Shown piece by piece: positions 2,313 through 7,504 of a stretch of 64,000 nt of DNA. Each line of letters opens with the position of its first letter. Positions within the stretch are counted from its first letter, which is position 1. The notes under the pieces were generated by a model. The model saw nothing but the letters and a program-made list of their open reading frames with translations. It did not search any database and was not told the DNA's origin. The translations under genes were made by a program, and so were the position numbers. The stretch comes from Ascoidea asiatica JCM 7603 (lineage: Eukaryota; Fungi; Ascomycota): assembly GCA_001600695.1 (NCBI GenBank), contig BCKQ01000004.1, forward strand, positions 951,489-1,015,488, given 5' to 3'.

Positions 2313-5300
2313 TCATATTGATTTCGAAAAACCAAAAGGAAGAGAAGAAGTTGAAAAAGAGGTTGAATTTGAGTTAGAGGCAATAGAATCATTCTCCGTT
2401 TTATCAGATAATATATCATGTAGAAAACTATTCTTTGAACGCTTTATCACGTCTGGTGTTTCTAAAGGATTCCTCAAATTAGTCAAGCTTCTTTTTCTTT
2501 TTTTCTGATGAGTAGGCTCCACGATTTCTATATCCGACTTGCTTTCTTCGGTACTATCCACAAGATCAATTATATTCTCATCATTGAAGCCATTGAGCAA
2601 ACTTTCATTGGATAATGCACTAAGCTTTTTGAATGAAACCTGATTTAATCTTTCCTTAGAGGGAGTATATTTTTTTTCCACCGAGAAACATTGAACAATT
2701 TTTTCATCCTTTGGCAAAATCTTAGGTGTAGGACTACGAGTTATAGTATTAGTATCAATATTGAATCTATCAAATTTATCAAATCTAGCAGAGCTATCAG
2801 ATATATCAGAGCTTTCAGAGATATCAGAGCTTTCATTGATCTCATCTAGTGAAATTATATTTGGATCACTTTTGCTATAATCATCTTCTGACTCAGAAAA
2901 TAAAGATTTAAGGCTAACTATATTTTGTCTATCAGACATCGGAGAAGGAATTAAAGTTCTATTTTGTTTAGTTTGCTTCTTCATAATTTCCTTCCTAATG
3001 TTACTATTCTGTTTCCTATTCTTTTCCAATGAAAAACTTTCTGGAAGATTAATTGTTCGATCTTTCCTCATTCTAAAATTGCATTGTAATTTATTAGTCA
3101 AAATTGTGAGTTGTTTCAGTTTTTCCTGAATTTTTTTGAATTTTTCATTATTTTTAAAGGAAGAGCAACTTTGAATCATATTTCTAAAATTGTCTATTTT
3201 GGGAACGATAGCTCCTAATAGTCCATCAAATTCCTCTAAATTTAACAAAACAAGTTTTTTTAGCAAATTCATGAATGGACCCAATGAATCTTCAAGTGTT
3301 TGAAGAAAACAAGAAAGATCTAAATCATCTGAATAAATTAACTCGACTAAAAATTTAGATAATCTCATCACCTGTCTATCAACCTCGATAAATAAATGCC
3401 TAGCTTCTTGTGAAGCTGAAAATCTTTCATTGTATTTTGAAGAGCTACTTTTTAAATCTAATACATCTTCGTCGACTAGAACTTCTTCAACAAATTCAAT
3501 TTCACTGCCAGTACTACTTTCGCTACTTTCGATATTTTTTTCATTAACCGTTGTTGACGCATTTTCATTATCAAAATCCTTATTTTTTTGGGTGATGCCA
3601 ATCTCACTGCCTAATTTGATATTATCTAGAAAATGCCTTCCATACCTAAAACTATTTTTAAGGTCATTTTTCTCAACTGGGCTTTTCAAAGGTGATTTAT
3701 TCTGAGATTTATCTTTGTTTTGAGTGCTATACCTTTGAGATTTCAAACTTTCTTTGTGGATTTCATTTTTAGCCTCCGTTATGATTTCTTGATCTTTTTT
3801 ATTCTGAGTTTTATTTTCACATTTAGGCAATAAATTCTTATCAAGAGGTTTTTGGGCTTCTGGGATCTTCTTAACAATCTTAGTGCCAAAAAAAGAATCA
3901 CTAGCGAGCCTCTTTTCAATTGAAGATATATAGTCATCGATTTTACACTTATATGAATTAACAACAAAATCTAGTGCTCTTGAAGTTTTCTTTTTCTCAG
4001 TTGAAGAAGACTTTTGCTCTTTGGAGGTAGACTCATTTATACTTTTTTTGTAACTTTCCGGTGAAGAAATTCCTGCTGAAGTAGCACAAAAACTTGTCAA
4101 TGGTGTATCACTTTTAAAGTCGGAAGAATCATAATCAAATATTTCTTTTTTCCCACTCTTAGGATCTGAATAAATATCACTATTTATAGCACTACATTCA
4201 CTTGAATTTCTCGTATAGTCTATAAAAGAATCCGTTGATGGTATATCGGATGTTATTTCACTTACTATTTTTTTGCTTTCCACTTTTTCGCTTCCACTTG
4301 AAATCTCTTTAGCCATTTCAGAGGAAAAAATATTTGAACTCATAGAGTGAGAAACTGTTGATTTTTCAATTTCTTTGTTTTTATCTGTCTGTGCTGTATC
4401 ATCTTCTTCATCATCAGAAAGGGAAAAAATATCAACTTTTGAAAGATCTTGAACTTTATATTGTCTTTTCCATTCTTCTGAATCATTACTTTTTAGAGGG
4501 AGCTTATTTGAATCAATTTTCATGTTAGAATTTGAATTATTAGGTATATTTTTTTCGTCTGCAGATTCAGAGTCTCTAGGAAGAAGTTCAAAATCATCAT
4601 CCTCGGAAGAGCTATCGAAATCAGAAAAGTCATCTATTGGAAATCTTGAATCATTATCACCTAGTAAATTCACTAAACCATGATCATCATCGAAATGAAA
4701 ATCCTTTATTAATTCTCTTGCATCTTTTACCGAACACCATTTTCCATTAATAATTTTACTTTTGTTTTTTTCTAAAGTCGCAATTTCAATGTCTTCTTTA
4801 GACTTGCTATTTGAATATTTTGAGTCGGTTCTAGAATAATTCTCATAAGAGTTGGACAAACTATAACCGATATAAATAGTTCGAAATTCTACTGAATTCA
4901 ATTTATCAAGGTAATATAAAACATTTTCAAGACGTAAATCATCATCGAAGTCCTTTTTGGAGCCAACGGAATTTAAATTTATTTCTAGAATGCTAATTGT
5001 CACAGCGCAATAAATCAATGCTTGGATATTAACATAGCCATCACTGAATCTTCTTGGAACATAAAAGGTTTGAGAAATTTTTCTTTGATCGACTTTGAAA
5101 GTATAAATATCACAAATATCTTTTATATTTATCGGTTTTCTCAAAATTGAATTTGACAGACTATCTGTTTTATTTCTTTGTAAAATTTCTCTTCTTGAAC
5201 TTCTTTGGGAATAATTTGGGTTAACTAAACCTCTTATTTTATTCAATTTTTCCGGAGTTAGTGAAAATTGATAAGGATATCCATGAAATTTTTTATAATC

Positions 5301-6719
5301 CCTTGATTTGATATCCCAATGTTTTAAAAATTTTAATTCATATTTTGAAACGAATAAATCATTATTTTGATAAAATTTCAGATCTTGAAAAAATAAGATT
5401 GGATTTAAAACTTTTGATAACCCATATATTACAGAAAATTTTCTCGCAATAACTAAAGGTATCCAAATTCCTCCACACAAAGTTTTATCATTACTTTCAT
5501 ATAATATACCATTCTGTTCTTTATAATTGTTCAAAAATAATCTTCTTAAATTTTTTCTTGCGGACTCACCTTTAAGATTCTCATAAACATCAAACAAATG
5601 ATTTAAGTTTATATAATTATCAGATACTTTTCTCAATATTCTTATTTGTTTATCATAATTCATATATACAAAATATTCAAAGAATTCAATACCACAATAA
5701 CTTGTTTTTGAGACTCTATTAAAGGATAATAGAGGTTTTAAGAGTTTAAAGATTTTAAATTTTTTTGATAAATTTCTTGCTATTGGTAATGGTAACCAAA
5801 TACCTTGAAAAAAAAATTGTAAATTTTTATCAAAATTTGAGTAAAATTGATATTTATTATTAATTAAATTTAAACATTCAATTTTTATTTGTTTTGAAAA
5901 TTTTTTTGATTCATTATGAGATAATAAAGATTTAAATCTAGATACATTAACCCAACTGCCAATTTTTTTCCTTGGATATAAATTTTTTAAACCATTGATT
6001 TGTAATAAATAACATTCATCATTTTCGAAAAGTATTGACTTTAATGGTACAGAATAATCACTCAAAGTTGGTTCTATTGAAAAATTAATTGGATAATCTT
6101 TCAAAATTGTTAAATTTTTTGTTTTAAATAAATTTGATTCATATAAAATCTGATGATTTTCTTTTCTTTTTGATTTATGATCTTTTTTAAAGCCTTCTCT
6201 ATAAAGACTTGAAGGAGAGAGAATATTGAAATCTTTCATGGTTTTATCATTTTCTAGATTACTATTTTTATATATATCATTTTCGTTAGTATAATCCGAA
6301 GATTTAATTTCAAATTCTTCAAAACCTTTATTTTTTTGCGTACTTTGTATATTTTTAATACTTTGAATATTTTGATTGTTTTGATTATTTTGTTGTTTGT
6401 TTTCAGTATTTCGAAAGTTTTTATTCTTTTTATTCTTTTCAAAATCTTTAGTATTTATCATCATATCTTTTCTTTTTGAAATTTTATTTTCTTTAACTGA
6501 TTTAAGATATCGACTAGGATTGTACTTTATAGTGATTTTGTGACTAATTTCATTTTTGCTGTTATTGCTATTACTATTGTTTTCATTATGATTAAAAGTT
6601 TGCTTATCCTTATTCTTATAATCTTTATTTCGATTAGCCTTCTTATTGCTGATGCTATCCTTTATCTTATCGTTATCATTTATAATTTCAAAAAAGTGAT
6701 CACAAGAAAACTGGACCAT
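2313..6719 (-). CDS. Large putative transcription factor with three tandem APSES/KilA-N domains and a long low-complexity C-terminus
   Basis: Three repeats of the Mbp1/Swi4-like pattern: RKKIGSWVNVS..FQGIWLPLPIARNLSKKFKIFKLLKPLLSF; RKVSDNYINL..GGIWIPLVIARKFSVIYGLSKVLNPILFF; RRFSDGYVNI..NGKWCSVKDARELIKDF. A KKRKR NLS-like motif lies near the C-terminus. Confidence 0.8.
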   Translation of the reverse strand: MVQFSCDHFFEIINDNDKIKDSISNKKANRNKDYKNKDKQTFNHNENNSNSNNSKNEISHKITIKYNPSRYLKSVKENKISKRKDMMINTKDFEKNKKNKNFRNTENKQQNNQNNQNIQSIKNIQSTQKNKGFEEFEIKSSDYTNENDIYKNSNLENDKTMKDFNILSPSSLYREGFKKDHKSKRKENHQILYESNLFKTKNLTILKDYPINFSIEPTLSDYSVPLKSILFENDECYLLQINGLKNLYPRKKIGSWVNVSRFKSLLSHNESKKFSKQIKIECLNLINNKYQFYSNFDKNLQFFFQGIWLPLPIARNLSKKFKIFKLLKPLLSFNRVSKTSYCGIEFFEYFVYMNYDKQIRILRKVSDNYINLNHLFDVYENLKGESARKNLRRLFLNNYKEQNGILYESNDKTLCGGIWIPLVIARKFSVIYGLSKVLNPILFFQDLKFYQNNDLFVSKYELKFLKHWDIKSRDYKKFHGYPYQFSLTPEKLNKIRGLVNPNYSQRSSRREILQRNKTDSLSNSILRKPINIKDICDIYTFKVDQRKISQTFYVPRRFSDGYVNIQALIYCAVTISILEINLNSVGSKKDFDDDLRLENVLYYLDKLNSVEFRTIYIGYSLSNSYENYSRTDSKYSNSKSKEDIEIATLEKNKSKIINGKWCSVKDARELIKDFHFDDDHGLVNLLGDNDSRFPIDDFSDFDSSSEDDDFELLPRDSESADEKNIPNNSNSNMKIDSNKLPLKSNDSEEWKRQYKVQDLSKVDIFSLSDDEEDDTAQTDKNKEIEKSTVSHSMSSNIFSSEMAKEISSGSEKVESKKIVSEITSDIPSTDSFIDYTRNSSECSAINSDIYSDPKSGKKEIFDYDSSDFKSDTPLTSFCATSAGISSPESYKKSINESTSKEQKSSSTEKKKTSRALDFVVNSYKCKIDDYISSIEKRLASDSFFGTKIVKKIPEAQKPLDKNLLPKCENKTQNKKDQEIITEAKNEIHKESLKSQRYSTQNKDKSQNKSPLKSPVEKNDLKNSFRYGRHFLDNIKLGSEIGITQKNKDFDNENASTTVNEKNIESSESSTGSEIEFVEEVLVDEDVLDLKSSSSKYNERFSASQEARHLFIEVDRQVMRLSKFLVELIYSDDLDLSCFLQTLEDSLGPFMNLLKKLVLLNLEEFDGLLGAIVPKIDNFRNMIQSCSSFKNNEKFKKIQEKLKQLTILTNKLQCNFRMRKDRTINLPESFSLEKNRKQNSNIRKEIMKKQTKQNRTLIPSPMSDRQNIVSLKSLFSESEDDYSKSDPNIISLDEINESSDISESSDISDSSARFDKFDRFNIDTNTITRSPTPKILPKDEKIVQCFSVEKKYTPSKERLNQVSFKKLSALSNESLLNGFNDENIIDLVDSTEESKSDIEIVEPTHQKKRKRSLTNLRNPLETPDVIKRSKNSFLHDILSDKTENDSIASNSNSTSFSTSSLPFGFSKSI

Positions 6720-7504
6720 ATTACACTATCTTTTAGAATAAAAATGTAACTTATTAGATAAATTATGAAGAAAAACTAGGCAATTGACTAGCCTTGAAAT
6801 AACTTTTAGTATGTTTAATTTACTTTATTGTATTGATATTCTTTTATTATTATTGTATTATTTTATCTTTGTTGATTTATGCTCAAAACAGTAATCATGA
6901 ATTTCAAATATATTTTTCCAGATAATCTGAATTTGTTAGTTTCCTTATTTCCAAAGTTTGTTTCCATTTAATCTATGCCACTGTTAACGCTACTTACTTT
7001 TTCTTTCGCGTTTCTCCTATGTTTTTGGTGTTTAGGGTAAAATCCGCAGGAATCCGGATAGGCATCATACCCAACGCTATTGCGTGCAGTACACTAACGC
7101 GAATTATTTAGCGTGCGTTTTTTTAGCCTTCGTTGCGTACAATTACTAAAAACAATATTAGCAACGCAATCTGCGTTAGCGCAGCACACGTTGCACCAAA
7201 AAGTAGTCGTGCAATGCAATAGTGCGAACGCATCGCACAACGCTTTCCTGTTCCAGAATAAATGCGCAGTGTCCCGTTATCAAGAGTATTGCGGCTAGTT
7301 TGAAAACTAGCCTCTGGTAACTAAAAATTCCAGCCGCAAGCGTGATATCCCTGCAAGAGCCAGCATTCTCACCAGCCATTGAATCTCGATTTGAAGTTTT
7401 TGGGTAAAATAAGCCATTTCACCGCCTTTGTAGCCACATTGAATCCAAAAAGGGACGCAAGGCGCATAAGTGTTGTTGTTTGTTGATGTTTTGTTTGTGG
7501 TTGC

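What the first reader, a model, noticed from the sequence alone, without database searches (positions are those of the whole stretch)
4660..6050. Triple APSES/KilA-N domain protein: a candidate new transcription factor architecture
Seen: three copies of the APSES signature (R-x-x-x-D/S-x-W/Y-V/I-N ... G-x-W-x-P/S-x-x-x-A-R) at about aa 224-333 (nt 6050-5721), aa 335-443 (nt 5717-5390) and aa 536-687 (nt 5115-4660). Domains 1 and 2 abut with almost no linker. I see no ankyrin repeats in the roughly 780-aa low-complexity tail. Known: the characterised fungal APSES proteins (Mbp1, Swi4, Xbp1, Sok2/Phd1/Efg1, Bqt4) each carry one such domain, and the fold is related to viral KilA-N. Inference: either an internally duplicated Mbp1/Swi4-derived DNA-binding array that reads multi-site DNA without Swi6, or an independent capture of a viral KilA-N gene.
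Basis: partly seen in the sequence, partly recalled or inferred. Interest (0 to 1): 0.85.

Follow-up and report, generated by a model that had tools for sequence, protein, structure and literature searches.

The report
Triple-APSES protein family beside MBP1
This yeast gene encodes three fused copies of the DNA-binding fold of the cell-cycle regulator Mbp1, and belongs to an apparently undescribed family found in several yeast orders, including the laboratory yeast Komagataella (Pichia) phaffii, where it usually sits head-to-head with the MBP1 gene it probably came from.

Summary
ORF 6719-2313 (-, 1468 aa) carries three APSES/KilA-N folds at the stated coordinates. Evidence: profile-profile probability 99/99/96% against canonical APSES domains, a confident AlphaFold model (pLDDT 85, pTM 0.85), and structural matches to Mbp1 (domain 2 Z 13.6; an orthologue's domain 3 Z 11.0). 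There are no ankyrin repeats. The protein is not a one-off: 16 relatives occur in Ascoidea, Cyberlindnera, Wickerhamomyces, Komagataella and unnamed yeasts, and this genome has four paralogues (other scan readers noted those). In 6 of 10 relatives' loci the gene lies head-to-head with MBP1; Ascoidea has lost that link. This favours local duplication of the Mbp1 domain over fresh viral capture, though trees cannot decide it. The QxGxGxxQ wing that reads MCB/CGCG is absent from all 60 family domains, so it should not read MCB sites. Most relatives also carry a TFIIS-N (TND/LW)-like bundle (Z 11.8) and a conserved C-terminal motif; the window copy lacks the motif and its bundle could not be confirmed as a TND. 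No paper on the family was found. Function is inferred: a Swi6-independent DNA/chromatin tether for transcription factors.

The parts
2313..6719 (-). Single-exon ORF, 1468 aa, triple-APSES family member; orthologue of Ascoidea rubescens ASCRUDRAFT_9142
   Evidence: 63% identity over the domain region; same downstream neighbour gene
6051..6719 (-). N-terminal Asn/Lys-rich low-complexity leader (aa 1-223), absent from most relatives
5721..6050 (-). APSES domain 1 (aa 224-333); basic (net +12); conserved RxKIGSWVN, GxW and PLLxF; keeps only the second wing glutamine
5382..5720 (-). APSES domain 2 (aa 334-446), best conserved; Mbp1/Swi4-type Y-x-G-x-x-F-x-E start; wing changed to a conserved T-L-C-G-G-x-W
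   Evidence: (Z 13.6 to 1bm8)
5130..5381 (-). D2-D3 linker (aa 447-530) with conserved W468 and F-x-G-[FY]-P-x-x-F (aa 478-485); that part is ordered in the model, the rest is a variable insert
4659..5129 (-). APSES domain 3 (aa 531-687), divergent: long helix A, acidic family motif D-P-D...E-N-E-L-Y-Y, Ascoidea-specific insert of about 35 aa before the L-N-G-K-W wing
   Evidence: orthologue D3 Z 11.0 to Mbp1
3429..4658 (-). Ser/acidic low-complexity region (aa 688-1097), no ankyrin repeats
3054..3428 (-). Hydrophobic, probably helical segment (about aa 1098-1222) at the position where relatives carry a TFIIS-N (TND/LW)-like bundle; TND identity NOT confirmed for this copy (terminal Trp lost, no profile match)
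   Evidence: negative for this copy; positive for orthologue P0003
2313..3053 (-). Ser-rich C-terminal tail with a KKRKR basic cluster (possible nuclear localisation signal, inferred); the family's conserved C-terminal motif is absent here
7000..7260 (.). GC-richer upstream segment in the divergent promoter shared with CDC5; two ACGCGAA sites (7005-7011, 7097-7103), not significantly enriched locally; single-copy

Best explanation
This is a member of a conserved, apparently undescribed yeast family derived from the Mbp1/Swi4 (SBF/MBF) DNA-binding domain. Shown: three APSES folds, a single origin of the triplet, head-to-head linkage to MBP1 in six relatives, loss of the ankyrins, the Swi6-association tail and the MCB-reading wing, and a TND-like bundle in an orthologue. 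Inferred origin: a copy of the 5' part of MBP1 (or its Res ancestor) landed inverted beside the parent gene and triplicated internally, before Pichiales, Phaffomycetales and Ascoideales split; Ascoidea and one unnamed yeast then moved and multiplied it (3-4 paralogues). Inferred function: a nuclear, Swi6-independent DNA/chromatin tether. D1-D2-D3 form one rigid unit. The basic D1 and D2 contact DNA with a specificity other than CGCG. D3 is structural or binds proteins, as the Swi6 N-terminal and Bqt4 APSES domains do. The TND recruits acidic-helix motifs of transcription or chromatin factors. The window copy is a diverged paralogue that keeps the triplet but may have lost the recruiting modules.
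For: Fold. Family of 16 relatives with the same triplet; four paralogues in this genome. D1, D2 and D3 each form one starred clade. MBP1 is the divergent neighbour, 161-1453 bp away, in K. pastoris, C. jadinii, W. ciferrii and three unnamed yeasts. Domain profiles score Mbp1/Swi4 at 40-57, 26-34 and 22-38 bits, against phage KilA-N at 5-10, 2-6 and 8-21. The model fits Mbp1 (TM by target 0.74-0.76) better than any viral protein (at most 0.52). QxGxGxxQ occurs in 0 of 60 family domains and 8 of 8 Mbp1/Swi4 domains; in PCG2, Q89N abolishes MCB binding (PMC4333399), and D3 has N there in 15 of 20 members, D2 has G in 19 of 20. Median net charge is +4.5, +5 and +1 for D1, D2, D3. The orthologue's tail bundle ranks LW/TND domains first (Z 11.8, rmsd 2.0 over 88; IWS1 9.9; TFIIS 9.5), with many TND hits in Foldseek.
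Against: No experimental data, and no RNA run was listed. Domain trees do not resolve the backbone: AU tests reject neither Mbp1, StuA nor phage sisterhood (p 0.35-0.46), and the viral outgroup was only three phage sequences. The window copy is not next to MBP1 (MBP1 is on contig 5, the paralogues on 1, 2, 4 and 7). The TND is a helical bundle, for which Z under about 13 can reflect a common arrangement; no member hit Pfam Med26, and the window copy fails the TND profile. DNA binding rests only on fold and charge. Rigid packing rests on pTM from a 20-sequence alignment.
Confidence: 0.55

Rival explanations
1. A sequence-specific transcription factor whose three APSES domains all read DNA as an array, giving a long composite site.
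For: The RR-x-SD-G-x-x-N and G-x-W cores are conserved in all three domains. The domains pack as one unit. D1 and D2 are basic.
Against: D3 is near-neutral and its recognition-helix region is acidic. The Mbp1 base-reading wing is lost everywhere. Conservation of G-x-W and N is largely structural.
Confidence: 0.2
2. A non-DNA-binding scaffold: the APSES domains act as peptide-binding platforms, as in Bqt4 (Rap1, Lem2, Sad1) or the Swi6 N-terminus, and with the TND form a multi-adaptor protein.
For: Bqt4 and Swi6-N are the next structural hits after Mbp1. Loss of wing and 20-loop features explains why Swi6-N does not bind DNA (PMC4333399). Wing residues of D1 are not conserved.
Against: D1 and D2 keep a net positive charge like Mbp1's and conserved basic motifs. 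Two AT-hook-like GRP motifs in paralogue L015 point to DNA association.
Confidence: 0.15
3. Independent capture of a viral KilA-N gene, later triplicated.
For: The AU test does not reject joining the domains with phage KilA-N (p 0.35). The D3 profile scores 21 bits on one cyanophage KilA-N.
Against: Head-to-head position beside MBP1 in six genomes. Higher profile and structure similarity to Mbp1/Swi4. No viral relative in viral contigs, phages or PHROGs. Ordinary yeast genes surround the locus. Fungal SBF+APSES domains are reported as monophyletic (PMC4862756).
Confidence: 0.05
4. A dominant-negative or competing regulator of MBF/SBF, co-expressed with MBP1 from a shared bidirectional promoter and occupying G1/S promoters without Swi6.
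For: The divergent arrangement is conserved, down to 161 bp in K. pastoris. Some CGCG sites lie upstream of several members.
Against: It lacks the CGCG-reading residues. CGCG sites are absent from three of the six shared promoters and are not consistently enriched. Linkage is lost in Ascoidea.
Confidence: 0.05

Closest known systems
Mbp1/Swi4/PCG2 (SBF/MBF DNA-binding subunits)
   Same: APSES winged-helix fold (Z 13.6 for D2, 11.0 for an orthologue's D3); best profile scores for all three domains; Y-x-G...E start in D2 and L-x-P-L-L-x-F end in D1/D2; physical linkage to MBP1.
   Different: Three domains instead of one; no ankyrin repeats; no detectable Swi6-association C-terminus; QxGxGxxQ wing absent; TND-like bundle in most members.
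StuA/Sok2/Phd1/Efg1 APSES factors
   Same: APSES fold in a low-complexity protein without ankyrins.
   Different: Single, highly conserved domain; the family profiles score StuA-type domains about half as well as Mbp1/Swi4. This genome has four separate StuA-type genes.
Bqt4 and the Swi6 N-terminal domain (APSES folds used for protein binding or without DNA binding)
   Same: Structural matches (Z 9-11 and 6.6); precedent for a non-canonical wing.
   Different: Single domain; Bqt4 is membrane-anchored (own knowledge), and no such anchor was looked for or evident here.
TND/LW proteins (TFIIS, IWS1/Spn1, Set2, Elongin A, LEDGF/HRP2)
   Same: The orthologue's tail bundle matches LW/TND structures best and ends in a conserved Trp; a chromatin-binding module plus a TND resembles the LEDGF layout.
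   Different: No TND protein with APSES domains appears in the passages read from the TND review (PMC9987994), which counts four annotated TND proteins in yeasts; sequence similarity is at noise level; not confirmed in the window copy.
Chytrid multi-APSES protein KAJ3102828.1 (Phlyctochytrium planicorne, annotated 'swi6')
   Same: Several APSES domains in one chain (seven found) and no ankyrin hit.
   Different: Domains are near-canonical, dispersed by long linkers and do not group with D1-D3; an independent expansion.
Viral KilA-N / N1R-p28 proteins
   Same: Same superfamily fold.
   Different: Weaker sequence and structure matches; no viral protein with the triplet was found.

Membership tests
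APSES/KilA-N superfamily | Winged helix-turn-helix KilA-N fold in each of three segments | tested here: met
   D3 structure search done on orthologue P0003, window D3 by profile and secondary structure
APSES/KilA-N superfamily | Pfam PF04383 above the gathering cut-off | tested here: inconclusive
   Window D2 22.1 bits against 23.8; full protein no hit; orthologues P0003 and P0006 pass
APSES/KilA-N superfamily | DNA binding | not testable with these tools
   Only charge and motif inference
Mbp1/Swi4/Res (SBF/MBF subunit) | Single N-terminal APSES domain | tested here: not met
   Three domains
Mbp1/Swi4/Res (SBF/MBF subunit) | Central ankyrin repeats | tested here: not met
Mbp1/Swi4/Res (SBF/MBF subunit) | C-terminal Swi6-association domain | tested here: not met
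   Family C-terminal motif against Mbp1/Swi4 C-terminus: HHalign probability 7%, 13 columns; window copy lacks even that motif
Mbp1/Swi4/Res (SBF/MBF subunit) | Wing motif QxGxGxxQ that reads CGCG | tested here: not met
   0 of 60 family domains, 8 of 8 Mbp1/Swi4 (PMC4333399)
StuA/Sok2/Phd1/Efg1 | Closest similarity to the StuA-type domain | tested here: not met
   StuA rows form their own starred clade
Xbp1 or Bqt4 subfamilies | Orthology by phylogeny | not tested
   No Xbp1 or Bqt4 sequence was available from the tools for the tree
Viral KilA-N capture | Closest relatives viral, or viral genomic context | tested here: not met
   the tree alone is inconclusive
TND/LW domain (family level) | Five-helix bundle superposing on TFIIS/IWS1 TNDs | tested here: met
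   Orthologue P0003 aa ~519-615: pLDDT about 90, five helices, top VIA hit LW domain Z 11.8; helical-bundle caveat applies
TND/LW domain (window copy) | Detectable homology of aa 1098-1222 to the family TND | tested here: inconclusive
   Profile hits only 2-3 bits; HHalign probability 2%; terminal Trp missing; not folded

The most novel reading that the evidence does not exclude
An Mbp1-derived, Swi6-independent factor in which a rigid triple winged-helix unit with a new DNA specificity is coupled to a TFIIS-N-type module. It would be a sequence-directed recruiter of transcription-elongation or chromatin machinery, and a further yeast TND protein, born beside MBP1 and kept head-to-head with it across two yeast classes.
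Probability: 0.3. Interest if true: 0.8.

Novelty: new variant of a known kind. Interest (0 to 1): 0.65.

Why it matters
The APSES/SBF family is the textbook case of a virus-derived domain that took over fungal cell-cycle control. Its described subfamilies (SBF/MBF, StuA-type, Xbp1, Bqt4; PMC4862756) are treated as single-domain regulators. A further lineage with three fused, re-specialised domains, still sitting next to its likely parent gene, would be a traceable example of how a transcription factor escapes its complex and gains new specificity and a new effector module. The family is easy to miss because Pfam fails on most full-length members. It has one detected copy in K. phaffii (PAS_chr2-1_0507 / PP7435_Chr2-0786), so deletion, ChIP and pull-down tests are straightforward.

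Tried and rejected
Two alignment-based homologous-protein searches were swamped by low-complexity candidates and returned one self-hit each, so the true range of the family is under-sampled. Absence from Saccharomyces and Candida is only 'not found by one single-sequence phmmer search'. No RNA run was listed, so read laying was not used and expression is untested. Domain trees and AU tests could not identify the donor subfamily. Homology of the family's C-terminal motif to the Swi6-binding tail of Mbp1 was rejected. Sequence tests for the TND (Pfam, HHalign against this genome's Dst1/Iws1 and a third TND protein) were at noise level; only the fold search supports it. MCB/SCB enrichment in upstream regions was not consistent. 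The upstream GC-rich segment is single-copy, so not a mobile element by this test. The conserved F-x-G-[FY]-P resembles the FxGF part of TND-interacting motifs (PMC9987994), but it is ordered in the model and lacks a consistent acidic linker, so it is kept as a weak lead only. ESM Atlas searches gave only generic KilA-N clusters or nothing. Literature searches for the architecture and for seven locus tags found nothing relevant.
Full report
Observation. The finding lies in a single-exon ORF, 6719-2313 on the minus strand, 1468 aa. Domain 1 (aa 224-333) hits the solved Mbp1 DNA-binding domain by phmmer (E 1.4e-5). Domain 2 (aa 334-446) hits Pfam KilA-N (E 1.4e-4, just under the cut-off) and aligns over its full length with Mbp1. 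Domain 3 (aa 531-687) is weak on its own (KilA-N E 0.07, split by an insert). With family alignments, all three match a profile of canonical APSES domains at HHalign probability 99.1, 98.6 and 95.8%, far above reversed and column-shuffled controls. AlphaFold2 on aa 210-700 gives mean pLDDT 85 and pTM 0.85, with three repeats of the APSES strand/helix order. The top ten Foldseek hits are all Mbp1, PCG2, Bqt4 or Swi6-N, and domain 2 superposes on Mbp1 with Z 13.6. Domain 3 was folded without domains 1-2 in an orthologue that lacks the insert (P0003) and gave Z 11.0, rmsd 2.5 over 92 residues to Mbp1. There are no ankyrin repeats. The tail is mostly Ser/acidic, but aa 1098-1222 is as hydrophobic as a folded domain.

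It is a family. A search of 1.84 billion cluster representatives returned 16 proteins with the same N-terminal region, 15 full-length triplets and one fragment. Named members are from Ascoidea rubescens (63% identical; same downstream neighbour), Komagataella pastoris, K. phaffii (PAS_chr2-1_0507) and K. kurtzmanii, Cyberlindnera jadinii and fabianii, and Wickerhamomyces ciferrii. These span Ascoideales, Phaffomycetales and Pichiales. UniRef labels several only as 'HTH APSES-type domain-containing protein'. The window's genome (20.3 Mb, 71 contigs) has four paralogues at 26-33% identity, plus separate Mbp1, Swi4 and four StuA-type genes. Assembly GCA_000960405.1 has three. The closest named relative and the assembly size suggest Ascoidea asiatica (own recollection, not tested). 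If so, the three CTG codons (447, 521, 1201) may read Ser; none is at a conserved position. In a per-domain tree, D1, D2 and D3 each form one strongly supported clade, so the triplet arose once.

Origin. Of ten relatives whose upstream neighbour could be read, six lie head-to-head with a KilA-N plus ankyrin gene, 161 to 1453 bp apart. That neighbour is MBP1: 65-70% identity to this genome's Mbp1 domain against about 50% to Swi4. PSA1 lies on the other side in four of them; MBP1 and PSA1 are neighbours in S. cerevisiae (own knowledge). The other four loci (A. rubescens and the three paralogues of the unnamed assembly) and the four copies in this genome are not linked to MBP1, which fits relocation and expansion in that lineage. 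All three domain profiles score best on Mbp1/Swi4, lower on StuA-type domains and, with one partial exception for D3, lowest on phage KilA-N. The model fits Mbp1 better than any viral structure. No viral relative was found, and the window holds ordinary yeast genes. The trees themselves do not decide the donor: AU tests reject neither Mbp1, StuA nor phage sisterhood. So derivation from MBP1 or its Res ancestor rests on synteny and similarity; I put it at about 0.8.

How it likely works. In the PCG2-DNA structure the wing motif QxGxGxxQ reads CGCG, and Q89N abolishes binding (PMC4333399). That motif is in all eight Mbp1/Swi4 domains examined and in none of 60 family domains. At the Q89 position D1 is variable, D2 has Gly (19/20) and D3 has Asn (15/20). 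The protein should therefore not read MCB/SCB sites the Mbp1 way. D1 and D2 stay basic (median net +4.5 and +5; +12 and +5 in the window copy), while D3 is near neutral with a conserved acidic motif before helix B. The ankyrins and the Swi6-association tail are missing, so it is not an SBF/MBF subunit. Most relatives have a ~90-aa helical bundle in the tail, ending in a conserved Trp. In P0003 it folds at pLDDT about 90, and the best match among 48,161 PDB representatives is an LW/TND domain (Z 11.8), with IWS1, TFIIS, yeast LW, Elongin A, Set2, HRP2 and LEDGF also listed. TNDs bind acidic-helix motifs of elongation and chromatin factors (PMC9987994). The Z-score is within the range that helical bundles can reach by common arrangement, and sequence tests were at noise level, so this is probable rather than certain. 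The window copy has a hydrophobic segment at this position, but it does not match the family profile and lacks the Trp; it also lacks the family's C-terminal motif. My committed reading is a Swi6-independent nuclear tether: a rigid triple winged-helix unit binds DNA through D1/D2 with a new specificity, D3 is structural or protein-binding, and the TND recruits transcription machinery. Fold, family, synteny and motif loss are shown; DNA binding, nuclear role and recruitment are inferred. No RNA run was listed for this gene, but an intact 4.4-kb ORF with 62% identity to its orthologue over the domains argues that it is functional.

Comparison and novelty. It belongs to the APSES/KilA-N superfamily but fails the membership tests for Mbp1/Swi4 and StuA-type factors; Xbp1 and Bqt4 orthology could not be tested by tree. 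The survey of fungal SBF/APSES evolution lists SBF/MBF, APSES, Xbp1 and Bqt4 subfamilies, and my term searches in it found no tandem or multi-domain forms (PMC4862756). Searches for the architecture and for seven locus tags found nothing relevant; the library lacks most subscription journals. Multiplicity alone is not unique, since a chytrid protein has seven APSES domains, but those are canonical, dispersed and do not group with D1-D3. Other first-stage readers of this scan flagged the same stretch and what appear to be its paralogues, including a possible TFIIS-N module. These are not independent evidence; I had tested the TND before seeing that note, and took the LEDGF comparison from s1-621531.

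Verdict. A real, apparently undescribed variant of a known kind: a conserved triple-APSES family derived most likely from MBP1, with a probable TND in most members and a tractable orthologue in K. phaffii. Interest 0.65. The window copy itself is a diverged paralogue and is the less informative member for experiments.

Noticed in passing
P0017 / L047:5001-11267: Chytrid (Phlyctochytrium planicorne) protein KAJ3102828.1, annotated 'swi6', has seven near-canonical APSES domains and no ankyrin hit; the next gene has KilA-N plus HLH. An independent multi-APSES expansion.
   Followed up: partly
L013:2081-5413, L014:2948-5356, L015:2105-6370 (genome contigs 2, 1, 7): Three further triple-APSES paralogues, only 26-33% identical to each other and to the window copy. 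L015 has a clear TND-profile match and two AT-hook-like GRP motifs; L013 and L014 keep the family C-terminal motif.
   Followed up: partly
C-terminal ~60 aa of P0003, P0008-P0012, P0014, P0016, P0043, L013, L014: A conserved, unassigned C-terminal helical motif (K-[YF]-[RK]-x-x-x-x-F-E ... D-L ... R-[LI]) in most family members; absent from the window copy and the A. rubescens orthologue.
   Followed up: partly
window:7000-7260: GC-richer segment upstream of the gene that folds better than shuffles (z -3.0) and holds two ACGCGAA sites; single-copy in the genome.
   Followed up: partly
L013:6055-6208: 154-bp foldback (33-nt arms, 88% complementary, plus inner arms) upstream of the contig-2 paralogue.
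   Followed up: partly
window:1095-1868: 257-aa ORF matching only the C-terminal third of the 712-aa Utp12-family neighbour of the A. rubescens orthologue; it is the only match in this genome.
   Followed up: partly
window:20268-24590: Two tandem TLC-domain (LAG1/LAC1-type) genes on the same strand.
   Followed up: no
window:47013-47972: T5orf172/MUG113-domain ORF (319 aa), a nuclease-like domain also common in DNA viruses; 40 kb from the finding and not linked to it.
   Followed up: no
L020:2823-4088 and L021:2910-4148: Two nearly identical StuA-type APSES genes on contigs 8 and 18, suggesting a recent duplication or unmerged haplotypes.
   Followed up: no
window:8161-8234: Short degenerate 12-bp tandem repeat upstream of the CDC5-like polo kinase gene.
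   Followed up: no
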